Assembly (NCBI GenBank): GCA_977016875.1
Contig: CDRNST010000171.1
Location: 868,001 to 932,000 of the forward strand
Source: Pavona decussata
Lineage: Eukaryota
Length of the DNA: 64,000 bases
Direction: 5' to 3'
Below the pieces are notes generated by a model that was not told the DNA's origin, did not search any database, and worked only from the letters and a program-made list of their open reading frames with translations. The stretch's first letter is position 1. Each line of letters begins with the position of its first letter. This document shows, one piece after another, positions 41,307 to 59,892 of the stretch. Position numbers and translations under genes: made by a program.

Positions 41307-44300
41307 TCAGTCTAATGGAATATCTTCGTTAGTGCCTTTGCGTGGCTGAGCTGGTCTTCTGTCCAAACTATTCAAGAATCGACCACTAACCAATGTTCCA
41401 ATGCCAGCAGGACACAGGGCGTTCAGGTCAAAAGGATCTTCAGCGTCAGGTGGGTTAGCCATTCTTTCCACAATAGCTCCAACATTTTCCGGTGCAAAGT
41501 CGGGTTGCCTTATCATCCACTTCATAGATTGAACAACACCTTGAAATGCATCAAGCATACGACGCCTCATGTTTGATTCACTACTCATCAAAACCTTCAA
41601 ACGAAAACAATATATCATCACACAACACAATACAGAACAATCTTCATTTAACTTAACAGGGGGAGATTTACAAAGTTTTCGTTAAATGAATATAAAAAAG
41701 AAGAAGAAAAAATAACGGAAGCATGTTTAAAATTGTCATAAGAACTGTTTATCAATTTAGGTTTCAATTTGTATTTCTATCAAGAGTGTATCGCCTCATA
41801 AACGCCCGAGGCTGCATTCACAAAGAACATGTCCTTGATTTTGTTAGTGGTATTGTGACAGCTGTGAAATGTATCATGAACATCTGGTCTACAATTTAAT
41901 AGGAGAAAACTTTTTGGGGAAAACTAAATTAAAGTCTCAAAAAATCATAAAATTTATCAAGAATATTTACAGTTTACTAACCTTCAGGTGGACTAAGCAC
42001 CAGAAGACTTCAAACACTGTCAGGAAGTTTTCAGCTTGCATGTTGTGCTCTATTATCATCGCTTTGAGATCTTCCACCAACGACATTTCCAGAGGGTCGG
42101 ACATTTCGAGTGTGTGATCGTCATTGAAGGCCTTGTCGATCAGTTCCTGTCCGGTGGCAAGGTAAATATCTTTCAGGTCATGGAAACTATAACTTGTGTT
42201 TAAATTCCTTTCTTGATGAGTGGCGCCCACTTCAATAGGAACTGTTGACAGTTGTAGATTTGATTGGCTGTCATCATTGCCAATGGTTGAAGGTGCTTTC
42301 ATTTCTCCAGGTCTTTGTCCGACAGTTTCCCCAAGTGGATCGCGCCTTTCCATTTCAGCTAGTTTTGCAGCTTCTTCACTCTGGATTAACTTGGCGAATT
42401 TCATCGGATCTTCTATGATCTCCACAACCTTTTCAGCCAAAGCGTCAAGAATCTCTGGGCTTTCAATATAATCTTCACAGAACAGGTTATATGAACTGAC
42501 AAAGAAATGCCGCAAGTTCTTTTCTATAAGAGATTCCAAAAGGTTCCCGAAGAGTTTCATCACGCACTCAGCTCTGTTGCTTTCGGTCCACATTTCGGCA
42601 CCGGTTTCTTCAATCGTTTGCAGAAAGATGTTTTTCAGATGGAAAGTCACCAAACCCTTTTGTTCCTTAGGACCTTTAAGATGGGCTCGATGATATTTCT
42701 TTAGGCAGCGGTAACATTCTCGCTGAACATCATTCATCTCTTGGCTTAACAGGTATTCTGCATGTGAAAAGGAGATTCTGAAGTCGCATTCCGGATTGCC
42801 CCCTTTCTTTGGTGGCTTGACAACCAAATGGAATCCATTTTGAACCACCTTGTGGACTATGTCTGGCGAGGGCCATTTGCGCTCTCGTTTTATCCACTCC
42901 AGTGCGACCTGTGGCCATCCTGGGCATCTTAAAGCAGGAACTAAATCACACCCAGCCACAATGGGTGCCTTCGGAGGGTCCTTCGATTTGGGGGAAGCTT
43001 TGGCTTCTTCACTAACTGGTTTGAAAAGGTGTTCGATGATGTAGTCTCTTTGGCTTGAAATGGTTTTTAAATCTTCGTATCCATCGTTCGGATTGCGTTC
43101 TAGGACCACAACCCTTGAAGGATCGGGCTCCACTGCTGAGGGTTGTTGTTCTGCGTTTGGCTCACTTTGGCTCTCACTCTTGGGCTTTTCGTGTTCGTTC
43201 TTATTCTGCCCACTCTTGTCGTTCGTAGTTGACTGCTGTGGCATCAGATTTCCTGAAGACTTGTCAAAATTCTGCAATGTTTCCTCCAATTTCTCTTGGT
43301 TTGAAGTGGAGGTAAAGTCTTCAGTAGACTGCTGGTTTTCATCAAAATTTTGTGCCATGACAGACGTTTGTTCCTCGCTTCTTTCGCTTTCGTTGTCGTG
43401 ACAGTTTTCTGGCGTGACATTTTGCATACATTTTCGCTCTGCTGCTTCCGCCGAGTGATCATCCCTTCTTCCGCTTTCGTTTTGAGTTTGACTTTCAATC
43501 TCGCCCATTCTGTCTCTGAAGGTTTTAGCGCGTTCGCTGAAAACTAACTCTTGAAACAGAAGAGGAAATGCTTCTGGTTGGCACAGCAGACCTCTCTCAC
43601 AGTATGACATTTGCACCTCATTAGCAAAGTCGATGTATTCCTTGAAGACATCGGCATGTTCTTTTGAATAGTTGTTTCCACTGGATCTGCAGAACTCATG
43701 GGCAAGCCATTCCCATTCCGCGAAGTCGATATTGGTTAATGTCTCCGGGGTTTTCATCCTTTCGGCCAACTCAGAAATTGAACCATATGACTGGGTTAAA
43801 TCAATTTGTATAGCTGGACAATATTCGTTGTTCTTCCATTGCCAAACACCAGTGTCCCACTTTTCTCGAGACGCGATCTGTAGTGTACGGTTTAAAAGAT
43901 CGATCAGATGTGGCGCTGAACTCCCATAAATTGCAGAGTGGAAATTCTTCAAGGCTGAAGTGGCCACGTACTCAGTGCCCTGCACAAGGCAGGATCGCAA
44001 AACGGGGTGATCGACACCTTTGATTTTCACGTGCATTGGGTTCTCCGAATATTCGATCATTTCGTCGTGGATCATCCGATCATCGGATTTAGGACAGATG
44101 ACTATATCTAAATCACCAACATCATCGGGTGCTGGGCTCTTTAAATCTTCAGCCGCACTCCCGTAGGTTTGAAGTATCATACAAATGTCAAACCTTTGGC
44201 TAGAGAACGCCGACAGCTGCTGTAACAAGAGGGCCACGCAATGTTCCGTGTGTTTCTTCCATAATTCGCCTTCCTTTCCTCGCTCTCCCATCGACTTCAA

Positions 44301-44348
44301 GATGGAGTTTAGATCCTGAGTGTTTTGGTCTTCCTCTTTTGACGCCAT
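41307..44348 (-). CDS. cGAS-like receptor (Mab-21/cGLR nucleotidyltransferase) copy B, 884 aa; exons 44348-41982 and 41594-41307
   Basis: NTase motifs YGSAAE (G63/S64), GDLDIV (D79/D81), CDLVPAL (D468), then WP..A.EW..R.R.WP, FHLVVK, FRISFSHAE, HLKN, RHFFV..YNLF of the Mab-21 family. Phase-0 GT-AG intron 41981-41595. Confidence 0.92.
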
Positions 44349-44419
44349 TTTGTAAAATCGAAATGGAGATTTTCAGTTAAATGTCCCACATTGTTAGAGG
44401 AAATTTATGAGAACGTAGC

Positions 44420-44438
44420 TTTCGATTTCGGTTTTCGA
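44420..44438 (-). promoter_or_regulatory. ISRE/IRF-E-like motif upstream of cGLR B
   Basis: Minus strand reads CGAAAACCGAAATCGAAAG (GAAANNGAAA), ~70-90 bp upstream of the ATG. Confidence 0.6.
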
Positions 44439-44928
44439 TGCTACTTTCCTCCCTACGTCATGTCACAGATCAAAATACAGTTCCCAGTCTTCCTCGTTAC
44501 AGTGCCTGAGGTCGCTCAAACGTCAATAAATCAATTAGTGCTTTTCAACCACAAGGTAGCCTCATAAAACATTAACAGCCAATCTCTGGTGTGAAAGACT
44601 TTTAGCGAGATAGGGTGCACATATCGTTGCTTCTTTTTGTTAGTAAAACGCGTAAGGACATTACGAGGATCGGGATAACGAGTTTTCAGGCCTTGAGTTT
44701 AAATTGTTTATTTTTGCTTATTTTAGCTTAAATTCATCTTTTTGCTCATTCCATTTTCCACTTTCTGAGTTAAAGAATGAAAACAAACATACAAGATAAC
44801 TGGTCTGATTAGGTTTGCACAGTTCGGCGGCTGAAAATTAAGCGGATTATAAGGAGGCAGAAAGTAGGGAACTCCAAGTAATTGTTTTAATTCTGTGTAT
44901 AGCGTTTATTTGGTTCATCGCAATGCGA

Positions 44929-45462
44929 ATAGGCCTTATCACGGTTTTCGACGACATTTTGACGAGTAGGCAAACAGGCTCGAAATAACAGTGTCTGTAT
45001 GGAAATCTGATGTCAAATAATTTTCATCAGAAAACATCGCTTCTGAAAAATTCATGAATTGGAAACTTTTGGCACTAGGAAAAGGATTTAAAGAAAAAAA
45101 ACTTGGAGGGATGTAGCTGTGCCAGAAAGCGTGCAGTCGTGTTTTGAGCTTTCCATACATTTCCCTGTATTTTTTTTCCCGCGAGCCTATTTTTAGAGCA
45201 GTTCACGGCTGGTTCGCTATACGGACAAATGTATGGAAAGTTCAAAACACGACTGGACGCTTTCTGGCACAGCTACATCCCTCCAAGTTTTTTTTTCTTA
45301 AAATCCTTTTCCTAGTGCCAAAAGTTTCCAATTCATGAATTTTCAGAAGCGATGTTTTATGAAAATTATCAGTTGACGTCGGATTTCAATACAAACACTG
45401 TTATTTCACGCCTGTTTGCCTACTCGTCAAAATGGCGTCGAAAACCGTGATATGGCCTATTT
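44929..45462. mobile_element. Foldback/MITE with ~210-bp terminal inverted repeats
   Basis: AATAGGCC.TATCACGGTTTTCGACG.CATTTTGACGAGTAGGCAAACAGGC... is mirrored at the right end. Confidence 0.8.
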
Positions 45463-47195
45463 ATTTTGATGGCCGTCTTGATTGGATAAAAAATTACGAG
45501 ATTTTTCGACTGAACAAAATTTAAAAAATCACGATAGCTTGCTTGCGTGTCGGGAATAAATGCGGTTAACAATGAGCGCTAAGGAAAATATCTTAAAGTA
45601 TCGCTGCATATTTTTACGGGTTGTGCCGTATTTTGGCTAGCCCGTAAATTTATTATCCAACTTAAGCCTTTCTGATTAGTAGCAAAGGAAACTACGAGAA
45701 AAAAAAAATTTAAGCAAGATTAGCACGCGCGTTAGAAAACCTTTCTTTTTGTTGTGCGAATAACCACCAAATTGGTTTTTGTTACAATGCAATGCAATTG
45801 ACTAACTGTATCAATATCGCGTCATATTCGTACTGTTTTCGCATATTTTTCGAACGGTACAAAGTGTAGTTGGATAGTAAAAACTAATATTTCTCAAAAA
45901 CTCCCGGAAATTTTGCCCCCAAAACAATGGATGAATAAATTTTCACGGGAAACTACAACTGGAAAAAGGCCCGAGTGTGACTGATGTCACGCACAGTGCT
46001 GATAAAACTTAGAAGTGAAACTGGCCTGCAACAGTTAAATTTTGTGCTGTCCTTATTTTATTTCTCCTGAAAACGGTCTTTGAGTTTATTTCGTTTTGTT
46101 GCAAGCATTCACCGCGTCATGTTATCGGGATATTCCGTTTCGCATAGCAGTCGAAATAATCGTCAATCCTTTTTCTGGGCACAGCAAACTACCTGTTCTT
46201 CAACACTTCATTAGGTATATTTTCTAGGGTGCATAGCATTTACATTGAAAGCCCGGAAAATTCCAGTTGGAAAATGGTACGCATCATTCCATTTGGAGTA
46301 CTTGTGAAATTATGGGCTTCTGGTCAAAGTGATGCACCCCTTTCCCCGAATAACACGACCAGGACAACATTCAGAAATGAGCCTAGCGAATATTCGACAG
46401 ATTGAAATTTAATTTAGTTTCTACAGATTGTGATTGCACTGCTAAATAAAGTACACTCTCTTAATGCTCCGATTTTTACCCTACAATTCCATTCTACCCA
46501 GTAAAGGCCACTTTGCGTGATTCTTTTAAAAACATTTTTAGATAAAGAATACTGAGAAATATAATTGCTCATATATTGTCTGTTCCATCAACGAAAAAAC
46601 TGTGAGCGTCTTGGAACATGCAATGGCCAAATATAGAAAGCTACGCATATTTTACACGCAATTTAAGGTTGTGTTTACTTTCCGTCAAATATTTCCGCTA
46701 AAGGCGCCCGCCGCACTTTCACTTTTAAGTTTTTCGCCTGTTTATCGACAAGTATTAAATTGACTTCCGTATGTCAAGACCTTAAATTGTAACATTATTC
46801 TTCAAAATGTCGTCACCTCGGCATTGGAAAGAAAAAACTTTTTGAATTGCAAATCGGAAATACAGGTCAAAATATTGAACTGTATGAGCTACTCAAGCTT
46901 TCAAAAATTATATGACACTGATTAGGATTTCCATGGATTTAACGAAAGGCTTGATATCTACCGCTGACAAGGGCTTGCTGGTAATTTCATTTTCAAGCCC
47001 TATTTTAGAAAAGTTAATAAATTCATCGATCCGAAACTAAGCTAGCTGTCTAAAGTAATTCAATTTTATCAGTAGATTTTCATCCATAATTGTATACTTA
47101 CATGCAGAATTAATCTAATACCGCTTTTCAAATTGCCAAGCAAGTGACTTAAATCGTCACAAAGTCAAAGTCATCGCTTCTGTATGAAGGTGACT

Positions 47196-47514
47196 TCAGT
47201 CTAATGGAATGTCATCCGTACTGACTTGTTTTGGCTGGGCTGGTGTTCCCTCGAAAACGTTAAGCCATCTGTTTATAACCTCTGTGCCTATCCCAGCTGG
47301 CAAAAGGTTGTTCAAGTCCAAAGGATCTTCACAATCGGGGTTAAGCGCTCGTTGTGCTATAGCTTCTACATTTTCCATTGCATAGTCATCTTGCCTGACA
47401 ATGTACTTCATGGTTTCAACAACCCCTTGGAGTGCATCGAGCATTCGGCGCCTCATGTTGGGTTCAGTGTTCATCCAAACCTTCAAGAAGGATACAATAC
47501 GCAGATATTATTGG

Positions 47515-47577
<63 letters not shown>

Positions 47578-50500
47578 TTTATTTGTACTCACTCTTGCTC
47601 AAAAATAAAATTACAACAAAGAAAATATTAAAAATAATAATTGGAGTACTGGCTGCCTTGAATAACCATAGGGGCTAGCGGAGCCAGGCAGCCAGTTGGC
47701 ATCAGTATTAAATAGAAATAAAATACAGGTCAGCAAGAAAGCTGAAGCACAAATGCACACATAAAAAGAAAAAGAGGAGAGGAAAAGGCTAATTCTACGC
47801 TGTAAGGGAAGTCTAGAATAGTTAAATTTAAATATAAATACAAAACTGTAATATAAGAAGAGCACGCAATAGCTATGACAACTAATAACAAGCTATATAT
47901 TAAACTATAACAGAAAAAAACATTAAGGCTTTGAAAGGTGACAAAACTAAACCAAAGACTTATTTACAGTGAATTTGCTAGAAAAATTACAAGAAACTAA
48001 CAATCTTTGACAAGATCGTCCGTATCAGTAATAAGTCGACTTGTGTTCTTCAGCAGAGAGCTTTTTTAACATTGATAGATCGGACTACTTAAAAACTTCG
48101 CATATGTAGGTGACCACGACGACATAAAAAATTTCATAGCATGACTTCCTTGAATGATTAAGAATAATCCAGCACTTCCTAGAATAGAACATTCCTCAAC
48201 TTTCTTTATTACACTAGAGCTTTATGGAGTCTTTCAAATGAATCCTGAATGTTACAATACATTGGGCAATGACGAAATCTTGGGAGTTTCACGCGACACT
48301 TTTTGTGCTTAAAGGGGAAGTATCATGGGGTTTTTGGTATCTTTTGTAAAAAATGATGAAATAAGACCTTCAAGTGATCAGCTGCCAAATAATTCTAGAA
48401 TGACAAGAGAACAAAAATTAACTCAATTCTCGAAAGGAACAACTCATGGTTTGTTCTAGCGCATTTTGGAAACAAAGATGCGAGAACTTGAAAAACATTA
48501 GCCTAACATTTTTCAAGTTTCAATCCATACTGGCCTACTCTGTCTCTGGCCAGAGGCGCTAATCAACAGCTTTATTGCACTGGGGTGATACTTTATTACA
48601 AACTTGACAATTATTTCTTTGTTTCTGCTGACAGACAAACATTTTTGGGTTTTGAAATGACAGCAAATTTGCGTGATACTTCCCTTTTAATTTTTAACAC
48701 GACTCTTATGTCATAAATTGAGTGGCCAGAAATGCTGCTGTCCGGCAAATCATTTATTTCCTTAAAAGCCTGTTCTGGAGTCAGCTTAACTACATGACTC
48801 ACTGTGGTAAGCGTTAAACACGTACAGCTAAACCTGATTGCCTTGATAACTTGCAATCAAGGCAAATGATGCTAACAGCGATTGAAACATCGATCTCTCC
48901 TCATTTATAAGTCCTTGCGTGGAACGCTAAGTTGTGGCCGCCATTCAAACGAAAATTCTTCACCGACACTTTCCTGAAATATTGTTTGTTTCTCGGACTT
49001 TTACGAGATTAAATTTAGTCCTCTTCGTAAATTTTGATTTTGGAAATAAATTTGAGTGGTATAATCATATTTCCTAGACTGTTTTGAATTCTTATAGAGC
49101 CGTTTGACAAGGTAGCAAACTAACCTTCAAATAGATCGTGTCCCAGAAGACTTCAAACGTTCTCAAGAACTCCCCAGCTTGAATGTTGTGCTTTGCAGTT
49201 ATCTCTCTGAGATCCTTCACCAAGGACGTTTCCAGAGGGTCGCGGATTTGATGTGCGTGGTCGTCGTTGAAGGCCATATCGACCAATTCCTGGCAGATTG
49301 CTAGGTAAATATCTTTCAGGTCATGGTAACGAGGACTTGTGTTTGAATTACTTCCTTTTTGTGTACAGGTGCCCTTTTCCGTGGGAACAGTAGAAGGTTC
49401 AAGCTTTGTTTGGACCTCATCATTGCCTCTCGATGAAACTACGTCCATTCTGCCATGACTTTTTCCTGAAGCAGTGTTTGCAGCTAGGTTGCTGTTTGGG
49501 GCGCATTTTTCTTTTTCCGCTTTCTTTGCAGCGTCTTCTTCTTCAATCAACTTGGCGAATTGAATCGGATTTTCTATGATGTGCGCAGCTTTTTCAGCCA
49601 AGGATCCCAGAATTTCGGTGTTTTCAATATAATCTACACTGAACAGATTATATGATCTAACAAAGAAATGTCGCAAGTTCCGAGTCACAAGTGCTTCCAG
49701 GAGGTTTCTCAAGAGCTGCATCATGCACTCAGTTCTGTTGCTTTCGGTCCACATTTCGGCACCGGTTTCTTCAATCGTTTGCAGAAAAAGGTTCTTCAGA
49801 TGAAACGTCACCAAACCCTTTGGATCTTTGGAAAGATAAGCTCGATGATATTTCTTCAGACAGCGGTAACAGTCGCGTTGGACTTCGTTTAACTCTTGGC
49901 TTAACAGGTATTCTGCATGGGAAAAGGAGATTCTGAAGTCGCATTCTGGATTGCCTCCCTTCTTTGGTGGCTTGACAACCAAATGGAACCCATCTTGAAC
50001 TACCTTGTGGACTATGTCTGGCGAGGGCCATTTGCGCTCTCGTTTTATCCACTCCAGTGCGACCTGTGGCCATCCTGGAGATCTCAAAGCAGGGACTAAA
50101 TCAAACCCACCCAGCATACGATTATCGTTCAGTTCAGGAGTTCCTTTGGTTTCCTCAGTGCCTGTTTTGAAAACATGCTCAGAGATTAGGTCAGTTATGC
50201 ATGAAAGGGACTTGAAATCGTCGTGATCCCTTGGGTTTTTGTTATGACGAACACTTTGTAGAATCCCTGTTGGGGGTTGCTGCCTTTCGTCTGACACACT
50301 TTGGCTGTCTCTCTCGAGGTCTTCATATTCGTTATTACTGTGATCACTGTTGTCACTCGCACCATTGTTTTCTTCAGATGATTGTTTTGACATCCGATCT
50401 CCCGAAGAACAGGCAGGATCCTGTAATGTAACTCCCACTGGCAATGTTCGGCTTGAACGGGATCTTAAGTCTCCACCAGACCTCTGAAAGCCAACAAAAT

Positions 50501-51506
50501 TTGGTGGCGTGACAGGTGACTCATCTTTGGACGGTAAACTTCCTTGTGACTCGTTTTCCTTACTTCCTTCACTTTCAATTTCTTGACAGTTTTCTGACGT
50601 TTCCAGGAAACAGCTTTCACTCTTTCTGCTTTCGTTCTTTCTTCGTTCTTCGATATTGCGAACTCTCTCTGCCAATTTTTTGGTGCGCTCGCTGAAAACT
50701 AGTTCTTGTAGCAGAAGGGGAAACGTTTGTGGTTTGCATAGCAAGCCTTTTTCAAAGTGGGAGGATTGCACTTCTCTTGCAAAGTCGAGATATTCGTTGA
50801 CTACTTCAGCGTGCTCTCTTGAATAATTTCCGCCTTTTAATTTGCAGAAAGTATTGGCTAACCATTCCCATTCCACTGTGTCAAGATTGGTCAACGTTTC
50901 CGAGTGTTTCTGCGTTTCCAATACCCCAGACAAAGGACCATCCGAGTGGGTGTAATTAAGTTGTAGAGCTGGACAAGCTTCGTTGTTCTGCCATTGCGCG
51001 GAAACTTTACCCATCTCCCCTCGAGACGCGAAGTCAAGTATACGAGTTGCAAAGTCGACCAAATGTGGGGAAGATTTCCCGTAAATTTCAGAATGGAAAT
51101 TCTTCAAGGCTGAAGTGGCCACGTACTCAGTGCCCTTCACCAGGCAGGATCGTAAAACGGGGTGATCGACACCTTTTATTTTTACGTGCATTGGGTTCTT
51201 GGCGGAATATTCGATCATTTCGTCGTGAATCATCAAATCATCGGATTTGGGACAGATGATTATATCTAGATCACCAACATCATCGGGTGCTAGGCTCTTT
51301 AAATCTTCAGCTGCACTCCCATAGAGTTGAAGGACCACGCAATTATCGAACTGTCGGCTCAAATACTCATTTAATTTCTTTAACAGGTAGCTTGGGCAAT
51401 GTTCAGTATAATCTTTCCATAGCTCGCCTTCCTTTCCTCGCTCTCCCATCAACTTGAAGATGAGATTTAGGTCCCGGGTTTTTTCGTCTTCTTCTCTCGA
51501 CGCCAT
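47196..51506 (-). CDS. cGAS-like receptor (Mab-21/cGLR) copy C, 888 aa; exons 51506-49125 and 47480-47196
   Basis: Same motifs (YGSAAEDL, GDLDII, FDLVPAL, FRISFSHAE, RHFFVRSYNLF). Phase-0 intron 49124-47481. Exon 2 VWMNTEPNMRRRMLD...DDIPLD. Confidence 0.92.
47517..47576. repeat. (TCAA)n microsatellite in the cGLR C intron
   Basis: Directly visible. Confidence 0.95.
48309..48690. mobile_element. TTAA-flanked MITE in the cGLR C intron
   Basis: TTAAAGGGGAAGTATCA...TGATACTTCCCTTTTAA inverted ends. Confidence 0.6.
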
Positions 51507-51710
51507 TCTAAAAAATCGAAATGTCCCTTAGTGCAACAGGTTTCAAATACTATTTCTGCAGTACGCTTGGGAAACATATATGCTACGTTTGTGTTGTTTC
51601 ATTTTCTAGTGGTATTTATGAGCTATTATTGCCGGGACGGGTAACCTTTCATGGTTAATCTTGTAGAACAGTTTTGATGATCTGATTTGACATTTTCAAT
51701 TGCATTAAAC

Positions 51711-51787
51711 TTTCAGTTTCTCTAGTGCTATAGGTTAAGTTAAGTTTGCTCGAGCGTTTCCTTGTCCAAACTTAGTTGAAACCGAAA
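51711..51787. promoter_or_regulatory. Two ISRE-like motifs upstream of cGLR C
   Basis: TTTCAGTTTC (51711-51720; GAAACTGAAA on -) and GAAACCGAAA (51778-51787), ~205-280 bp upstream of the ATG. Confidence 0.55.
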
Positions 51788-53444
51788 TAACGATCCCCTA
51801 GATGTTTACCTCAATTTTTAATGCGGTGATTAAAGTTTATTGCCAGGCGTCCTGGCTTCAGCTTTCCTCACGAAAAAAATTTGGATAGGAAAGAAACATG
51901 CGAATTGGCGATTGTCAAATGGAACACAGCATTTTGGGAAAAGACAAACTAAAAACTACAATCGGGTATAAATATCTTTTTCTACATATTCGACTAAAAC
52001 ACAATTGAAACTGCAATATGCAATTTGTCCGACGGACTTCCGCGTACAAAAATCACCAACGTTAGGCAGAGTATTTCAAAATAAAGGGTTATTGAAGACA
52101 ATAAATCAGTTGTTGAATCGTAGAAAGCAGCTTGACAGTGAATTCGTAGAACGTAGGTTGCAACTATTACAACAGTTCAAAGGAAATCATGTAGTACTAT
52201 TAATAGTAAACGAAATAATTTCCAAATGGGGAATCGAAAGGACGAGAAACTACGAAAAAGAAATAGTTACGTTGTTACGACCACCGAAATTATAGCAAGT
52301 AGGAAAGCAACTGTCACAGGCGAACTGTAATTAACTAGACTAAACTGCGCTTATTGCGATCCTAAACTAAAATGAGCGCGCTAAGTGCGACTGAAAAAAA
52401 TGGCATGACATTACTGGCAAGCGACGGCTTTTGTTCTCTGACCAATTCTGCAAGGAAAAGGAACAAAAGTAACTAAAAAGAACACAGTAACGAAAACAGC
52501 ATGTAAATGCACATTAACTGATGAAGAGGTGAAACGTAGGGCAAAAACACTGTATGAAATAACCTCAAAGAAAAATGCAAAAAAGGGAAGTATGAAGTAT
52601 GGCACACGAAGCGTTGGTCGCCCGTGTGTTCGAGTTGAAAACTGGCTTTTTATGACAAAAATCTTTTATATTTCCACTCTTTTTGCACTGATAATGAAAA
52701 TCTTGCTTTATTAAATGTTGTGCGTCTTGATGAAAGCGCTCAATGACCGGCAATGCAGTTGCAAGCCGTATATTTTAAAATAGGCAATTCCATCACGCTT
52801 AAAACCGTTGTTAAAACTCTGAACATAGTTAATTTAGCCAACAGGACAAACACGTTTAGAATCACCCCTTGATAATTTCCCAGCTTACAAAAAGGGCCGC
52901 CTCCGTTTTCCTCAGCCACTTGCACAAACCTCAATAACACGCCTTCTCAGGCTGAAGTCATTGATTTAATGCAGAGAGAGAACAATAGGATATTGTGAGG
53001 GTCAGTAATTATTAAATTATAATCTAAACCAGAAATACTTCGAAACAGATTTCTTCCAACACCAGTCTAGAGTTCATTAAGTAATTATACAATGAAAAGT
53101 GTAAAGCCCGCGCTTTGATTGGTCTAGAGGAGTTTGTACTTAAAGTACAGATGCACGCATGACGCCATGAGCCCCAGAAAATTCTCGTAGCCCTCCTTCG
53201 TAAAATGTTGCGTAAATTGAGGTGGCAGATTGCAGTTAGCCAATGACATTTTGTTAGCCTTGCTTTAGCCAATACGTGTGCATCCTCTTTATAGATCACA
53301 AATAACGTTATGAAAACGAAATTTGCCCTCTTATGATCAGTTTCCGCGCAAATCATCACTAAGAGGACTATCGTAAACAATTCAAACTTTAAATGTAAAT
53401 ATATAAAACATATATGAAACTCACAATATTACCAGCTCCGAGTT

Positions 53445-53590
53445 GGCTTGATAGCTCAGTTGGTAGAGCACTGCACCGGCACCGCAGAGGTCATGGGTTT
53501 GAATCCCGTTCAAACCTGAATTTTTTTCAGGCTTTCTTTTCGCAACTGCTTAAGTTGCGTAGTAACTGCGAGGATCTTTCTTCTATTTGA
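53445..53590 (+). mobile_element. tRNA-derived SINE
   Basis: GGCTTGATAGCTCAGTTGGTAGAGCACTGCACCGG...GGTCATGGGTTTGAATCCCGTT head with A/B boxes, followed by a non-tRNA body. Confidence 0.65.
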
Positions 53591-54032
53591 ATTCAAACTT
53601 TATACGTGACAACCAATATCCAAACTACTGTATAAAACAAATAGATTCCGAGTTTGCAATGCAGGCGTTTTCGGGCGCGAAAGCCAGAACCTCGGTAAGT
53701 CGTTAAGTCGTGACCGCCATGTTTTATTTTCAAAATCTTAGGGAGTTGCCCACCCCGTTGGTCACACTTTCTACTCGCCCCAATCTTTCTCTGCTTTTAA
53801 CATCCAAGATGGCGGCTATTGCGCTGAACCAAAATAACACGCCTGCATTGCAGGCTAATACATTCCACTTGGCCGTGTATTTGTACTCTAGTAACGCACA
53901 GAGAACGACGCACCAAAACGTGCATGGTAAGGACATCAGTCACGTCACTCGCCAATTGTTTGTAGCGTACGTCCTTGTCGTCACCTGTGCGTTATCACAG
54001 TAAATAAATAAATAAATAAATCAATCAATCAA

Positions 54033-54295
54033 TCAACTTTGTTTAACGAGGGTGACACTTAACAGTCTGAAGACTGACAAACCTGTGGCCCTCGGATTCC
54101 AGATCGAATTGGAATTTGGAAATGTTGGTTTTTGTGGAGGGAGGAAAACCGGAGAACCCGGAGAAAAACCCTCGGAGCAAGGACGAGAACCAACAACAAA
54201 CTCAACCCACATATGACGTCGAGTCCGGGAATCGAACCCGGGCCACATTGGTGGGAGGCAAGTGCTCACACCACTGTGCCATCCTTGCTCCCCTA
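54033..54295 (-). mobile_element. tRNA-derived SINE with (TTGA)/(TTTA) tail
   Basis: Minus strand GGGGAGCAAGGATGGCACAGTGGT...GGTTCGATTCCC; homologous to 10555-10760; ends in simple repeats at ~54001-54035. Confidence 0.75.
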
Positions 54296-54741
54296 CACAC
54301 GCACGGCACGTGGAATCTTTTGTTCCGACTAGACAGTGGAAATCGCCTTGCTGACTTGTACTAAGTCAACACGGTTCACCCCGAAAAAGCGGTCTTCACA
54401 TGTTAATTTCTCTTATTACTTTACTCAACTTTGGTTCTACAGCAACTGAATTGTAGAAGCTTCGCTCACGCTTGTACTTATGGTGACGAGTTGCTGAAAA
54501 CTCATCACTGTCAAATTAACACTTCAAGTTAAGGACGGTGCCTACTAATATGGTGGTATTTTTGTGTGGCTTATGACTGTGCGGGGAAAGCAGACCTGAG
54601 CAAGGACTATTGGGATCCACAGAGACAATTGGGGTAACCACGCATTTTTTTCTTAGAGATAATTAAGCAACAATTGTTCTTAAAACCAATAAAATACAAA
54701 GCAAGGTATGGCGTTTTTTTTTCCAAATTGAAGCTTTATTA

Positions 54742-55401
54742 ATCAACAAGTTTTTCGAAATTGATTTAACTATAAAAGTTAACGTTAAAAGAGAACGACG
54801 TTTCGACCGTCCGACGGTCATTTTCAAGTTCAAAATGAGAAGTAAAATATGTGTTTATATACAATTGTGAAAAAACTAATGAGATGCTGACTTAAAAAGC
54901 TCTAAGATATTCACATCTAAACAATATCAAAAATAATAGCGTGAATGATAAATACAAAGGAACGCTAAAAACGATAAAAGGTATTTAAAAGGTATTTAAA
55001 AGTGAAATAATTAAACAAATAACTTCGCGCGGATCGAGTCGCATTGTGTCAGAGCAAAACTCGACTGCTTGATCTTCGAGATGTTGTTTATTCGCGACCT
55101 AAAGCCGAAACTCAACAAACAATGCGACTCGATCCGCGCGAAGTTATTTGTTTAATTATTTCACTTTTAAATACCTTTTAAATACCTTTTATCGTTTTTA
55201 GCGTTCCTTTGTATTTATCATTCACGCTATTATTTTTGATATTGTTTAGATGTGAATATCTTAGAGCTTTTTAAGTCAGCATCTCATTAGTTTTTTCACA
55301 ATTGTATATAAACACATATTTTACTTCTCATTTTGAACTTGAAAATGACCGTCGGACGGTCGAAACGTCGTTCTCTTTTAACGTTAACTTTTATAGTTAA
55401 A
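54742..55401 (+). mobile_element. 5'-truncated Penelope-like element with inverted terminal repeat (284-bp perfect palindrome arms) and 13-bp TSD
   Basis: Arms 54764-55047 and 55119-55402. Spacer plus right arm encode KLDCLIFEMLFIRDLKPKLNKQCDSIRAKLFV*, resembling a GIY-YIG C-terminus. TGAAGCTTTATTA occurs at 54729-54741 and 55402-55414. Confidence 0.8.
55335..55373 (+). ncRNA. Minimal hammerhead ribozyme motif (U3-A8 variant); mirror copy on - strand at 54793-54831
   Basis: Stem I GAAC/GTTC, core TTGAAAA(T), stem II GACCGT-cgg-ACGGTC, GAAAC-GTC with loopless palindromic stem III (ACGT). Confidence 0.6.
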
Positions 55402-55420
55402 TGAAGCTTTATTATCTCTG

Positions 55421-55451
<31 letters not shown>

Positions 55452-56170
55452 AGGATACCAAGAGCACTTGCTGAGTTCTACGTTCTCCGCATAGTTTTAA
55501 ACTACGCAAAAATATCCCTGTATTAGATGCGCAGAGCGTATGCGCAGTAACAAAAGTAGGCACCGTCCTTAAAATGTAGTCTAAAGTTATACGCTTCGCA
55601 GTACGTTTTGCGCTGAAATTCGTCTACATTTTGGTATGATTTGCATACGTGGCTTCGTCCGTAGTAAGTTTTCAGCTGATATGATATCATTACCTTCTTC
55701 ACCGCACAATGTTTGCAACCATTACTGACGTGCCAAGTAGGAAATAACACAACGAGAGCAACATAAAAATTACAAGGAATATTTCTATCGATTAAAACTT
55801 GGCATTAACACAATGAGAGTTCATGTAAACTCAGGTTAAACTATTACAAAAGTACATTATTCAAATAAACAGAAAAACTCAGAAAATAATGTGCAAAACG
55901 ACGCTTTCAAAAATCGTGTATTTTTAAGGGTTGATACATAATATCGTTAGACTATGCAAAAATTCTATCATCGAATTTTAGTGGAAATTCAAATAAAGAG
56001 CAAAAGTCAGAAAATAATGTGAAAAACATCACTTTCAAATACAAAAAAATAACGAGAATTTTTATCACTAGTCACTAGTTTCACAAGTTTATGCAAACGT
56101 CTGTCATCGAAATTTCAGTGGTATCCGATGTTTTTCGTGAAACGTTAACGTCCCGTGTCCAAAGTTTCCA

Positions 56171-58566
56171 TCAGTCTAATAGAATGTCTTCGATGTCAAC
56201 CTTTTGTGGCTCAGCTGGTTTCAGACTCTTGAGCATTCTGCGAAATAGCTGCAACCCTAGATTAGCAGGTAATACGTGGCTGAAGTCGAAAGGATTTTCA
56301 GCAGTGCAATCAAGCATTTTGGCCAATGCTGCGCCGTTCTCTCCAAGTACAGCTTTGTCTTGCCTTAACATGTACTTCAGGACCTCTACGACACCTCGTA
56401 TTCCGTCAAGCATTCGGAGTCTCATTTTCGGTTCAGTGCTTAACCAAACCTTGGTGTAAATCATCTTCCAGCCAGACTCAAATATCATGAAGAGCTCGTC
56501 AGCGTTGATATTGTGGATTCGTCCGATTTCTCTAAGCTCTTCCACCAATGACCGTTCTAGAGGGTCCAGAGTTTCAAGCCTGCAATCAGCGACGTTGGCT
56601 GCCATATTGATCATCTCTTTGCTGGTAGCGAGGAAGATATCTTGTAGGTCATGGTATCGATAACTGGTCCTTGAACTGCTTCCTTTTTGCTTTGCTTCTG
56701 CCTGCTTGCCTTGCTCCTCGTCACTGCGTTTGGCTGGATCCTTTACGATTTCTTTATGTCCATGTCTTGTGGCAGATGCTGCAGATGAGGTCGCCTCGCT
56801 GCTGAGAATGTATTTTGTTTCATTTTTGTCTTGCTTCGTGTCTTGACCACTAATCAACTCTTTGGCAAATTGCAACGGATTTTTCATGATCTGTTCAGTT
56901 TTTTCAGCCAAAGATTCCAGAATCTCGGGGCATTCAATGTAATCGACACAGAACAAGTTGTATGATCTCACAAAGAAATGTCGCAAATCCTTCTTTTTAA
57001 GAGCTTCCAAAAGATTCGCGAGTAGCTTCATCATACAGGTGGCTCTGTTGCTTTCAGTCCACATCTCGGCACCGGTTTCTTCAATCGTTTGCAAGAACAT
57101 ATTCTTCAGGTGAAATGTCACCAAACCCTTTGGGTCTTTGGAAAGATAGGCTCGATGATAATTCTTCAGACAGCGGTAACAGTCGCGCTGGATTTCGTTT
57201 AACTCTTGGCTTAACAGGTATTCTGCATGTGAAAAGGAGATTCTGAAGTCGCAATCCGGATTTCCACTGTTCTTTGGAGGCTTAACTACCAAGCGGAAAC
57301 CTCCTTGAACGACTTTGTCGACTATGTCAGGCGAGGGCCATCTACGCTCTCGCTCAATCCACTCCAGGGCAACGTTTGGCCATCCTCGGGATCTTAATGC
57401 TGGGACAAAATCAATTCCCTCAACTATCTCATTGAACTGCGCTTCGTCGATGTTCTTAAATTCCGCTTCCTTAAGGGGATCTTCGGTTGATTCAGCAATC
57501 AATCCGACCATATATTGAAACAAATGTTCAGTTATTCGTGGAAAGCTCTTCACTTCATTCTCTTCTTCGTCTGGATTACGTGGCTTATCTTTACTGACCA
57601 GCTGAGCGATCGCGAAGGAATGTGGCCCAGTTTTCTGCTCATTTTGGTTTCCACCAGTGTCTCTGTTCTTCTCATCTTCACTCTGATACGCCATAATCCC
57701 TTTTGTTTCAGTCCCTAGGATTTTCGTTCTCGGTTCGCTGTTGCTCTCTGGTAAACTCTCGATATCTTCAAGTCGGGCTTTGAGCTTTTCAGCTCCCCTC
57801 CAAACCTCGGAGACCATCTGAGAAATATCACTTGGATAGCTGTTGAACGCAGAAGCGAAGACTCCATTCATTGACTGAATCATGTCGTCGAAAATTCTTG
57901 CCTTTTCTTTAGTGTAATCAGTTCCACTGGTGGTACAGTTCCAATGTGCCAGCCACTCCCATCCAGCTGGATCCAAAGTAAGAGGCAGTTGCAAATTTTC
58001 AGGCCCGTCTTTGATGATCAGCTCCTCATAGTCTCTCCAACTGGGAAGAGAGCTAGAACAAGAGAGGGTCGAAGCAAAGTTATCAAAAAAGGTGAAGGTT
58101 AAAGCTGGGCTTGTTCCACTAGTGTGGAACTGCCCAGTGTTTAGTGCCAAATCTTCTTGAGGTGCTATCTGCTGAAGTATACCGGTATAACAGTCCCCAC
58201 CATAAATTGCATGATGGAAATTCTTTACAGCTGAGGTCGCCACGTACTCGGTACCTTCTTTAAGGCAGGACTGCAACACCGGATGATCGACTCCCTTGAT
58301 TCTGACGTGCATTGGGTGCTCGGGTAAATATTCGATCAACCTGTCATGCATCATCAAATTATCTGAATTCGGAAAGATCATGATGTCCACATCTCCAGGT
58401 TTATTGGGGTTATAACACATCACTTCTTCGACTGAGCTTCCAGAAGGTTCGAATATGATGTCATTTGAACACAGTTTAGCAAAAAGCTGATCTCCTTTCC
58501 TCGTTGTCCGAGAGCCTTGAAGATAAAGTTGAGTTCCTGAGTTTTTGAATCCTGTGTCCCTGCCAT
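56171..58566 (-). pseudogene. cGAS-like receptor copy D, intronless, frameshifted near the 5' end (~58490)
   Basis: ATG at 58566 gives MAGTQDSKTQELNFIFKALGQRGKE, homologous to the B/C N-termini, then runs to a stop at 58420. The homologous EPSGSSVEE...GDVDIMIFP...IDFVPAL...DILLD* lies in another frame, whose first ATG is downstream of the GS motif. About 20 codons are missing relative to B/C. Confidence 0.78.
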
Positions 58567-58643
58567 TTTACAGGAACTAAAGTATCTCTGACATTCGACG
58601 GGTTTAGAATTAGAGGTTGTGATTTGCACAGTTAAGCCTGTCA

Positions 58644-58674
58644 CATTTATAGCAGTTTATGTTTCGGTTTTCGA
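58644..58674 (-). promoter_or_regulatory. IRF-E-like motif plus TATA box upstream of cGLR D
   Basis: TCGAAAACCGAAA (58662-58674, identical to the B promoter motif) and CTATAAATG (58644-58652) on the minus strand. Confidence 0.55.
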
Positions 58675-59892
58675 GACTATATACGGATTGTGCTTAAACC
58701 GAGTCGTGAGTCCGTCACAGGTTAACTGCAATGGTCCTGAAACGAAATCTTCAAAGTGATACACGTAGCCTTTTACACAAGGCTTTCATTTATCTGTCGA
58801 AAACAAGTTGCGACGCCAATCAGACAAAAGTGCTGAGTATCCAATGTCACTTTTGGTTTTCTCATTTCTGAGTTATTTATGGATGATTTTGCTGGTTCAT
58901 AATAAAATAAGACTGACAGTTTTCTAGAATTTTGTTTTCTAAAGTTTTTGGATCAGTGATGCTTTGAAACTTGATCAGGTAACCTAATAGTCGGCACATT
59001 ATGCACACAAGGCAGACAAGTCCATATCGACCGCAGGACACGTCTCATATGTATTTTTGCCCGGTTGGCACCGGTAGAAAATAGACGGGGCTATCTCGAG
59101 ATTTGCTACTGCTTGAGATACGTACATCGATATTTCCCGCTATCAGAATTTACTTTTAAAAACAGGAAACAGGAAAGAAAATGTGAAAAGAACTATTTGA
59201 TAGAAAAGAATGGTACCTTATTAGAGACATAATGAATTCGAGCCACGAAAATGAAACAAGGACTGAATCTGCATGGTACGTCCATAGTCGAGGGCTTCCG
59301 GTTAAAAGCTATTTCCATTTCCCCCCTTCCCGCCTCGAATACGATCCCCGGGTGCTTAACTATTCGAGGTTTTACGATAATTCAGTAAATCAGGACCGGA
59401 AACCAATCCGGGGGACTATTCAATTCAATTCTTTATTCACACTATATATACACGAGAACATTTACATACAATTCATATTATAAATAGAAGAAAGAAAGAA
59501 CAGAGGAGTAACATTAAGCCATGAAGAGATATGGTTCATGTGCGTGCAATGTTCAAAGTAGCAAAAGCTTTCTAGTTGGTCACCGCCAAGGTCAAGTAAA
59601 TGGCATTATAAAATTCATTAGTTATTCATTAAAGTTATGACCAATCAGTAGGTAGAATTTAAGTCACATGTACACCTCCGTAAACCCCAATACAAATCAA
59701 TGAATTATTAAACAGGAGAATTAACTTTTGATACAAACTCCTGCTCAGCTAATTAGTATTCATTAACTTTTAATACAGATCTCTACAGATTAAAATACAA
59801 AACACAATACATTCAATTTATTGTTTCAATTCACAAGTACGAAAACATATTCGCGTCCGATCTGTATGGGCTCGCCTTCGGCTCGCCATTGT

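What the first reader, a model, noticed from the sequence alone, without database searches (positions are those of the whole stretch)
44420..58674. ISRE/IRF-binding motifs upstream of all three cGLRs whose promoters are visible
Seen: B has GAAAACCGAAATCGAAAG at about -70 to -90. D has the identical 13-mer TCGAAAACCGAAA at about -96 to -108, next to a TATA box, although the rest of the B and D upstream sequence shows no obvious similarity. C has GAAACTGAAA and GAAACCGAAA at about -205 and -275. Established: GAAANNGAAA/AANNGAAA is the IRF element, and mammalian cGAS is interferon-inducible. Inference: an IRF-driven feed-forward loop on these receptors in a lineage without known interferons.
Basis: partly seen in the sequence, partly recalled or inferred. 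Interest (0 to 1): 0.7.

Follow-up and report, generated by a model that had tools for sequence, protein, structure and literature searches.

The report
IRF-type sites upstream of coral cGLRs

Summary
Three minus-strand Mab-21/cGLR paralogues (B, C, D) carry GAAA-repeat elements at the stated places. Paralogue A, whose promoter lies just left of the window, has one too.

This is not AT-rich background. GAAANNGAAA occurs 0.95 times per 330-bp promoter across the family, against 0.07-0.10 in controls. Composition-matched shuffles give 0.8 against 15.6 observed. Only GAAA half-sites with a 2-nt spacer are enriched.

The core AAACCGAAA is the best or only match between otherwise unalignable promoters of paralogues and of Porites. 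It lies 68-125 bp before the ATG. In A-D it sits 9-14 bp upstream of a TATA-like box.

The genome encodes five IRFs with IRF1/2/4-like DNA-binding domains. Their own upstream regions carry the motif about six times more often than expected.

Published Nematostella data show Mab-21 genes induced by cGAMP and poly(I:C).

Verdict: a real conserved cis-element, most likely an IRF site. The feedback loop is plausible but inferred. It is a new member of a known kind of regulatory logic. The scan had already noted ISRE-like sites at IRF genes of this genome.

The parts
41967..44348 (-). cGLR paralogue B, first coding exon (793-codon open frame starting at ATG 44348)
   Evidence: Pfam Mab-21 and Mab-21_C hits. 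The N-terminus holds the nucleotidyltransferase motif YGSAAEDL...GDLDIVICP.
44419..44439 (-). B proximal IRF-type element ATCGAAAACCGAAATCGAAAG. It holds two overlapping AANNGAAA cores, one 2-nt-spaced GAAA pair and one 3-nt-spaced pair.
   Evidence: Present in the orthologues in L049 and L052 with a variable number of CCGAAA/TCGAAA units; absent from the L050/L051 orthologue.
44403..44409 (-). B TATA-like box CATAAAT, 9 bp downstream of the element and 55-61 bp before the ATG
   Evidence: CATAAAT is found in 7 of 16 promoter lineages against 5% of background tiles. The transcription start site (TSS) was not mapped.
44354..44365 (+). B leader block. It reads AAAATCGAAATG on the plus strand, which is an antisense IRF core at -15 to -8 from the ATG.
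   Evidence: The same block sits at the same distance in A and C, and an antisense AANNGAAA sits at -15 in several distant homologues. Its role is unknown.
49092..51506 (-). cGLR paralogue C, first coding exon (804-codon open frame starting at ATG 51506)
   Evidence: Pfam Mab-21 and Mab-21_C hits; N-terminal translation; orthologues at 97, 89 and 74% identity.
51596..51606 (-).
   Evidence: Invariant in four species (alignment A1).
51577..51583 (-). C TATA-like box CATATAT, 13 bp downstream of the proximal element
   Evidence: Invariant in A1. TSS not mapped.
51710..51720 (-). C middle element GAAACTGAAAG (-205)
   Evidence: Invariant in four species.
51778..51787 (+). C distal element GAAACCGAAA (-272), inverted relative to the gene
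   Evidence: Invariant in four species.
56171..58566 (-). cGLR paralogue D. The open frame is broken by a 37-bp deletion relative to its orthologues, with the junction at 58490|58489.
   Evidence: Pfam hits; three-frame translation and alignment with L050 and L052.
58661..58674 (-). D proximal IRF-type element TCGAAAACCGAAAC (core AACCGAAAC)
   Evidence: In the orthologues the GAAA blocks are kept, with one spacer change and a variable 3' flanking base (alignment A3).
58645..58651 (-). D TATA box TATAAAT, 9 bp downstream of the element
   Evidence: Invariant in A3.

Best explanation
The GAAA-repeat sequences are functional cis-regulatory elements of the IRF-E/ISRE type. They have been kept by selection in the proximal promoters of one stony-coral cGLR clade.

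Proposed mechanism: one or more of the coral's five IRFs bind the AANNGAAA cores as monomers or dimers. The candidates are the IRF1/2-like proteins, which in other cnidarians mark immune cells and are themselves induced by cGAMP, poly(I:C) and bacteria. Binding would occur 10-25 bp upstream of a TATA-like box and would raise transcription of the sensor genes in immune cells and after immune stimulation. This would prime or amplify cGLR-STING signalling without interferon.

Shown here:
- The presence, enrichment, spacing specificity and conservation of the elements.
- The presence of IRF genes with a conserved DNA-binding domain.
- The same motif upstream of the IRF genes themselves.

Inferred: IRF binding, the direction of the effect (activation), inducibility of these particular genes, the position of the TSS, and closure of the loop through STING.
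For: Enrichment:
- GAAANNGAAA occurs 0.95 times per 330-bp promoter in the family, 0.10 in 30 GPCR control upstream regions and 0.073 in 792 random tiles.
- The lineage-weighted count is 15.6, against 0.81 +/- 0.83 in 1000 dinucleotide shuffles of the same promoters.
- 10 of 15 independent promoter lineages carry the motif (binomial p 2e-7). Leaving out the window's own genes gives 8 of 12 (p 3e-6).

Specificity:
- Among 16 same-composition patterns, only GAAA with a 2-nt spacer is enriched, 13-fold.
- The strict IRF-E form GAAASYGAAAS is about 60-fold enriched.
- Most hits (19 of 23) lie on the sense strand.
- Density is 2.3-2.8 per kb from -800 to 0, nil in the first 600 bp of coding sequence, and 0.22 per kb in background.
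- An unbiased k-mer screen ranks AAACCGAA, GAAACC, AAGTGAAA and AAACTGAA among the top words, beside CATAAAT.

Conservation:
- AAACCGAAA at -68 to -125 is the top or only HSP between the otherwise unalignable promoters of B, D, L036, L038, L044 and Porites lutea L055.
- All 32 motif columns of C are invariant in four species, against 221 of 298 other columns (p 1e-4).
- Oculina, Desmophyllum, Porites and an unnamed Logan contig carry consensus sites.

The candidate factor:
- The genome has five IRF DNA-binding-domain genes. The one tested (L058) finds IRF2, IRF1 and IRF4 structures as its best PDB matches, at E about 1e-35.
- There are 10 motifs in the 7.4 kb upstream of those genes, against 1.6 expected.

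Literature:
- AACCGAAAC and CCGAAACCGAAACC are high-affinity IRF probes, and sites with a 3-bp spacer are functional (PMC5861432).
- The mammalian cGAS promoter holds ISREs (PMC9496985).
- Nematostella Mab-21 genes rise after cGAMP (log2FC 2.6) and poly(I:C) (PMC13319465, Supplementary Data S23 and S7).
Against: - There is no binding or expression evidence for this species.
- The B orthologue in one related species (L050/L051) has lost the element through a roughly 50-bp deletion.
- Five lineages lack a strict tandem site within 330 bp: L035, L038, L053, L095 and the partly masked Orbicella locus L094.
- A and D carry only the non-canonical 3-nt spacing plus one full core.
- D is frameshifted in this assembly yet keeps its element.
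- In Nematostella, single IRF knockdowns did not change cGAMP-induced genes, and only NF-kB was shown to contribute (PMC8713801).
- Genome-wide, neither the 13-mer nor the triple repeat is more frequent than its reversed control.
- The GPCR upstream regions are an imperfect promoter control.
Confidence: 0.6

Rival explanations
1. The elements are functional and conserved, but they do not work as an inducible IRF activator site. Either another GAAA-reading factor binds them (for example a PRDM1/Blimp-1-like repressor). Or a repressor-type IRF2-like protein holds the genes down. Or they only set constitutive, cell-type-specific expression.
For: - The enrichment and conservation results say nothing about which protein binds or the sign of the effect.
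- Single IRF knockdown had no effect on the cGAMP response in Nematostella (PMC8713801).
- IRF1/2-type genes mark immune cells already at baseline (PMC13319465).
Against: - The shared core AACCGAAAC equals the optimal IRF half-site used as a probe (PMC5861432).
- The 2-nt spacing specificity is the IRF dimer signature.
- IRF genes of the same genome carry the motif, as expected for an IRF network.
- Anthozoan Mab-21 genes are induced by cGAMP and poly(I:C).
Confidence: 0.22
2. The motifs have no function. They are either chance matches in A-rich promoters or leftovers of one ancestral promoter copied along with the gene duplications.
For: - The paralogues descend from one gene, so a shared short word could be inherited.
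- The A and B promoters are plainly homologous.
- The C120 array members are recent copies.
- The element can be lost (L050 B).
- A pseudogenised copy (D) still has it.
Against: - Composition-matched shuffles never approach the observed count (0 of 1000).
- Permuted half-sites and other spacings are not enriched.
- Between promoters with no other detectable similarity, the core is the top or only HSP and sits at a similar distance from the ATG.
- It is found in species whose proteins are only 42-49% identical to C (Porites, Oculina, Desmophyllum).
- The C motif columns are significantly more conserved than their flanks.
Confidence: 0.1
3. The upstream regions examined are not promoters. On this reading, a 5'-UTR intron puts the true promoter elsewhere, and the motifs lie in an intron or an enhancer of another gene.
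For: - No TSS data could be obtained.
- C has a pyrimidine run followed by AG directly before its ATG.
Against: - TATA-like boxes lie 55-85 bp before the ATG in A-D and several homologues, and CATAAAT is itself enriched.
- A, B and D have no AG at the position that looks like an acceptor in C.
- Motif density peaks within 800 bp upstream and falls to about background further out.
Confidence: 0.08

Closest known systems
Vertebrate ISRE / IRF-E (PRDI-like) promoter elements of interferon-stimulated genes
   Same: - The same core (AANNGAAA) and the same tandem GAAANNGAAA with a 2-nt spacer preference.
- (G/C)(C/T) spacers and a C/G after the second GAAA.
- A proximal position upstream of a TATA box.
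- Occasional 3-nt-spaced variants, as in IFNB PRDI (PMC5861432).
   Different: - The lineage has no known interferon, so there is no IFN-triggered ISGF3 route; ISGF3 (STAT1/STAT2/IRF9) is, from general knowledge, vertebrate-specific and its components were not searched for here. Any binding would be by IRF1/2- or IRF4/8-like proteins alone.
- Binding and induction have not been demonstrated.
- The commonest form in A, B and D has 3-nt spacing plus a single full core.
Interferon-inducible mammalian cGAS (ISREs and a STAT1 site in the cGAS promoter; positive feedback on DNA sensing)
   Same: A cGAS-family sensor gene with IRF-type sites in its promoter. The logic is that a pathway output raises the level of its own sensor (PMC9496985).
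   Different: - Here a whole expanded clade is involved: 17 paralogues in this genome, with homologues across Scleractinia.
- The mammalian loop runs through secreted interferon and JAK-STAT. In coral the link from STING to IRF is unknown. Nematostella STING lacks the C-terminal tail that recruits TBK1/IRF3 (PMC8713801).
Invertebrate IRF axes described in molluscs and crustaceans (oyster cGAS/STING-TBK1-IRF driving an IFN-like protein; shrimp STING-IRF-Vago)
   Same: IRF proteins acting on ISRE-like promoter sites in animals without canonical interferon (PMC8218723; bioRxiv 10.1101/2022.12.18.520954, titles and abstracts seen).
   Different: - The targets described there are cytokine-like effectors, not the cGLR sensors.
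- Those are bilaterians, not cnidarians.
- In the papers searched here I found no report of IRF target sites in cnidarian cGLR promoters.
IFN-beta enhanceosome-type composite (ATF/CRE + IRF + NF-kB)
   Same: In distant homologues the IRF site sits beside a kB-like site and GAS-like sites. Examples are GGAAAGTCCC in Desmophyllum L057, and the sites in Porites L055 and Oculina L093. TGACGT is frequent near the IRF site.
   Different: The window's own promoters A-D show no kB or GAS consensus. The CRE enrichment is not significant after correction for multiple tests.

Membership tests
ISRE / IRF-E cis-element | Sequence consensus: an AANNGAAA core, or a tandem GAAANNGAAA (A/GNNGAAANNGAAA) | tested here: met
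   B holds GAAATCGAAAG plus AACCGAAA. C holds three GAAANNGAAA. D and A hold AACCGAAAC / AACAGAAAC with an upstream GAAA at 3-nt spacing. The consensus is taken from PMC5861432.
ISRE / IRF-E cis-element | More frequent than composition predicts, with the characteristic half-site spacing | tested here: met
   13-fold over random tiles and about 19-fold over dinucleotide shuffles. Only the 2-nt spacing is enriched.
ISRE / IRF-E cis-element | Lies in the promoter or enhancer of the regulated gene, close to the transcription start | tested here: inconclusive
   The elements lie 66-125 bp before the ATG, and in A-D 9-14 bp upstream of TATA-like boxes. Motif density peaks from -800 to 0.
ISRE / IRF-E cis-element | Evolutionary conservation beyond the flanking sequence | tested here: met
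   C: 32 of 32 motif columns are invariant, against 74% of the others (p 1e-4). D: 10 of 12, not significant. The core is shared among unalignable paralogue promoters and with Porites. It has been lost in one B orthologue.
ISRE / IRF-E cis-element | The organism has IRF proteins with a conserved DNA-binding domain | tested here: met
   The genome holds five PF00605 loci at 119-129 bits. L058 aligns to IRF2, IRF1 and IRF4 structures at E about 1e-35, with the WK..FRCA recognition helix kept. One gene also has an IRF-association domain.
ISRE / IRF-E cis-element | Physical binding by an IRF | not testable with these tools
   Needs EMSA, PBM, DAP-seq or CUT&RUN with coral IRFs.
ISRE / IRF-E cis-element | The gene responds to immune stimulation or IRF levels | not tested
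There is only indirect support: Nematostella Mab-21 genes are induced by cGAMP and poly(I:C) (PMC13319465, Supplementary Data S23 and S7).
cGAS-like receptor (cGLR) genes | Mab-21 nucleotidyltransferase fold (PF03281 plus PF20266) | tested here: met
   B, C and D each hit both Pfam families above the curated cut-off.
cGAS-like receptor (cGLR) genes | Catalytic G[S/G] and [D/E]h[D/E] motif | tested here: met
   YGSAAEDL...GDLDI(I/V)ICP is present in C and B. D has the equivalent PGDVDIMIFP, but it lies downstream of the frameshift. The third acidic residue was not examined.
cGAS-like receptor (cGLR) genes | Ligand-activated synthesis of a cyclic dinucleotide | not testable with these tools
   Biochemistry is needed.

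The most novel reading that the evidence does not exclude
An interferon-independent circuit, in which IRFs drive transcription of an expanded cGLR sensor family through IRF-E sites next to the TATA box, has been conserved across Scleractinia. Together with the motif-bearing IRF genes, it would form a self-reinforcing antiviral network that predates interferon. On this reading the 'ISG-like' promoter logic, including sensor amplification, was already present in the cnidarian-bilaterian ancestor.
Probability: 0.35. Interest if true: 0.72.

Novelty: new member of a known kind. Interest (0 to 1): 0.55.

Why it matters
How cnidarians mount a broad 'interferon-like' antiviral transcription programme without interferon is an open question. 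In Nematostella only NF-kB has been tied to it, and IRF knockdowns were uninformative (PMC8713801).

This finding supplies short, conserved candidate IRF target sites at defined positions in front of defined genes. They are present across corals and specific in their spacing. That makes the role of cnidarian IRFs directly testable with probes, reporters and motif-aware re-analysis of existing cGAMP and poly(I:C) RNA-seq data.

It also suggests that transcriptional amplification of cGAS-family sensors is older than interferon.

Tried and rejected
- Exact 13-mer as a regulon probe. The 46 genomic copies are mostly two repeat families and show no excess over the reversed control, so this was uninformative.
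- Triple-repeat genome scan. It gave 74 hits against 81 for the control, many of them hexamer microsatellites, and one falls in the C120 cGLR array. I did not try to fetch them another way.
- Other antiviral genes. For the same reason, the promoters of STING, GBP, OAS, viperin and the other Mab-21 clades of this genome were not examined.
- A Logan contig (L096), fetched in the hope that it was a transcript giving a 5' end, looks genomic. It only added one more promoter with GAAAGTGAAA at -101.
- NF-kB and STAT consensus sites are absent from A-D, so they were rejected as the shared element of the window's promoters.
- The Cell version of Li et al. 2023 (the Stylophora cGAMP RNA-seq) is not held. 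The stored part of the derived table S22 has no Mab-21 rows.
- The Orbicella locus L094 is masked with N upstream of -275. It was left as it is and not counted.


Full report
**What is there**

The window is G000:C171:868001-932000 of a 602-Mb stony-coral genome. Homologues of its proteins come from Oculina, Desmophyllum, Porites and Orbicella.

Three minus-strand genes, B (first-exon frame 41967-44348), C (49092-51506) and D (56171-58566), each hit Pfam Mab-21 and Mab-21_C above the cut-off. B and C carry the nucleotidyltransferase motif YGSAAEDL...GDLDIxICP near the N-terminus.

A fourth paralogue, A, starts at C171:866334 on the plus strand, 1.7 kb left of the window. The clade has 17 copies in this genome: A-D, a 12-gene array on contig C120, and single genes on C103 and C318.

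**Check of the observation**

- B has GAAAACCGAAATCGAAAG at 44419-44436, which is -72 to -89 from the ATG.
- D has TCGAAAACCGAAA at 58662-58674 (-96 to -108), flanked by TATAAAT (58645-58651) and TATATAG (58677-58683).
- C has GAAACTGAAA at 51711-51720 and an inverted GAAACCGAAA at 51778-51787.
- A has GAAAACAGAAAC at -86.

The only blastn match between the B and D promoters is the 13-mer. That 13-mer occurs just 46 times in the genome, and about half of those copies belong to two repeat families that do not involve B or D.

**More than chance**

I took the 330 bp before the ATG of all paralogues and of homologues from other corals. GAAANNGAAA occurs 0.95 times per promoter there. It occurs 0.10 times in 30 GPCR upstream regions of the same genome and 0.073 times in 792 random 330-bp tiles.

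I then collapsed recent duplicates into 15 lineages. Ten lineages carry the motif (binomial p 2e-7 at a 10% background). Leaving out the window's own lineages gives 8 of 12 (p 3e-6).

Dinucleotide-preserving shuffles of the promoters themselves give a lineage-weighted count of 0.81 +/- 0.83 (maximum 5.4), against 15.6 observed. For B+C+D alone the figures are 0.13 expected and 4 observed.

The signal is specific. Among 16 patterns built from permuted half-sites (GAAA, AGAA, AAGA, AAAG) with spacers of 1-4 nt, only GAAA with a 2-nt spacer is enriched, 13-fold. The stricter IRF-E form GAAASYGAAAS is about 60-fold enriched. Most hits lie on the sense strand.

Motif density is 2.3-2.8 per kb from -800 to the ATG. 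It is zero in the first 600 bp of coding sequence and 0.22 per kb in background.

An unbiased k-mer screen puts AAACCGAA, GAAACC, AAGTGAAA and AAACTGAA among the top words, together with the TATA-like CATAAAT.

**Conservation**

In three closely related assemblies the D-C-B cluster is syntenic. All three C elements are invariant in four species: 32 of 32 columns, against 221 of 298 other columns (Fisher p 1e-4).

The D element keeps both GAAA blocks, with one spacer change. For D alone the test is not significant (10 of 12 columns invariant).

In the A/B lineage the element is present in five of six sequences. The number of CCGAAA/TCGAAA units varies, and the element is partly decayed in a homologue whose protein is 54% identical (L053). 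It is absent from the B orthologue of one species because of a roughly 50-bp deletion.

Between promoters that are otherwise unalignable, the best or only short match is AAACCGAAA, at -68 to -125. This holds for B, D, L036, L038, L044 and Porites lutea L055. B and L038 share 17 of 18 bases around it.

More distant homologues also carry consensus sites:

- Oculina has two inverted GAAAGTGAAA at -88 and -67.
- Desmophyllum has GAAACTGAAA next to GGAAAGTCCC.
- Porites has GAAACCGAAAGT at -93.
- An unnamed Logan contig has GAAAGTGAAA at -101.

**Promoter layout**

In A-D the element lies 9-14 bp upstream of a TATA-like box: CATAAAT in A and B, CATATAT in C and TATAAAT in D. Each box lies 55-85 bp before the ATG. 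This predicts a start site 25-55 bp before the ATG, with the element around -40 to -60 from that start. This layout is inferred, because no transcript ends could be examined.

**The candidate factor**

The genome has five loci encoding an IRF DNA-binding domain, and one of them also has an IRF-association domain. One of these domains aligns to the IRF2, IRF1 and IRF4 crystal-structure sequences at E about 1e-35, with the WK..FRCA recognition helix retained.

The 1.5 kb upstream of the five IRF genes hold 10 GAAANNGAAA against 1.6 expected (p about 1e-5). Three of them lie within 150 bp of the ATG. Two unchecked notes of this scan had already flagged ISRE, GAS and kB motifs at IRF genes of this genome.

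Published binding work defines AANNGAAA as the IRF core and A/GNNGAAANNGAAA as the dimer site. It uses AACCGAAAC and CCGAAACCGAAACC as monomer and high-affinity probes. It also shows that sites with a 3-bp spacer, like those of A, B and D, are bound more weakly but are functionally active (PMC5861432).

**Interpretation**

The best-supported reading is that these are real IRF-type cis-elements that put the clade under IRF control.

Indirect support for inducibility comes from Nematostella. A Mab-21 gene annotated CGAS rises with log2FC 2.6 after cGAMP and is enriched in immune cells. Four other Mab-21 genes rise after poly(I:C) (PMC13319465, Supplementary Data S23 and S7). Cnidarian IRFs are themselves induced by cGAMP, poly(I:C) and bacteria (PMC8713801, PMC13319465, PMC11444771). 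The mammalian cGAS promoter likewise holds ISREs (PMC9496985).

The following points argue against a strong claim:

- Nothing here shows binding or induction in this coral.
- Single IRF knockdowns in Nematostella did not change the cGAMP response, and only NF-kB was implicated.
- The element has been lost in one orthologue.
- Some family members lack a strict tandem site.
- D is frameshifted in this assembly by a 37-bp deletion after codon 26.

How STING would reach the IRFs is unknown; it may run through transcriptional induction of the IRF genes.

**Rivals**

- A different GAAA-reading or repressive factor, or a role only in cell-type-specific expression (about 0.2).
- Non-functional inheritance or chance (about 0.1). 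This is disfavoured by the shuffles, the spacing specificity and the conservation in unalignable promoters.
- A misplaced promoter caused by a 5'-UTR intron (below 0.1). This is disfavoured by the enriched TATA-like boxes.

**Novelty**

IRF-E/ISRE promoter logic, IRF axes in invertebrates (oyster, shrimp) and an interferon-inducible cGAS are all known. In the papers I could search, I found no report of IRF target sites in cnidarian cGLR promoters.

I therefore file this as a new member of a known kind. Its interest is moderate, because it turns the open question of what cnidarian IRFs do into specific experiments.

**Limits**

- The N-masked part of the Orbicella locus was left untouched.

Noticed in passing
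window 58489-58490 (paralogue D, minus strand): D lacks 37 bp that are present in three orthologues. The deletion falls just after codon 26 and shifts the frame into an early stop. In this assembly D therefore looks like a recent pseudogene, a null allele or an assembly error. Its promoter is intact.
   Followed up: partly
window 44354-44365 and 51512-51523; also A (L033), L054, L093, L095: A conserved leader block CATTTCGATTTT lies directly before the ATG. It places an antisense AANNGAAA core at exactly -15 to -8 in A, B and C, and in several distant homologues. It could be a second IRF site, an initiator or leader element, or translation context.
   Followed up: partly
L057:2760-2790, L055:2900-2920, L093:9905-9945: In Desmophyllum, Porites and Oculina homologues the ISRE is interleaved with GAS-like TTCNNNGAA sites. 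In Desmophyllum it is also next to a perfect kB-type GGAAAGTCCC, an enhanceosome-like composite. The window's own promoters have no GAS or kB consensus.
   Followed up: partly
G000:C287:1649451-1839418 and G000:C436:4041023-4050798: Seven identical triple repeats GAAAGTGAAAGTGAAAG are spaced 17-43 kb apart on C287, and two GAAACTGAAAGTGAAAC lie 10 kb apart on C436. They may mark other tandem gene families with ISRE-type promoters. The DNA could not be fetched.
   Followed up: no
L058-L062 (five IRF genes of G000): All five IRF genes carry GAAANNGAAA upstream of the ATG, three of them within 150 bp (GAAAGCGAAAGG at -148, GAAAGCGAAAGT at -93, GAAATTGAAACT at -42). This suggests IRF auto- or cross-regulation.
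   Followed up: partly
window 43382-43391 and 50573-50582: Sense-strand GAAANNGAAA matches lie inside the coding exons of B and C, about 930-970 bp after the ATG. They contribute to the window-wide excess (18 against 8.7 expected). They are probably coding sequence rather than regulatory.
   Followed up: no
alignment A2 (B orthologues), around window 44419-44436: The number of CCGAAA/TCGAAA hexamer units in the B element differs between close species: one unit in L049, two in the window and in L052, none in L050. The site appears to evolve by slippage of units.
   Followed up: partly
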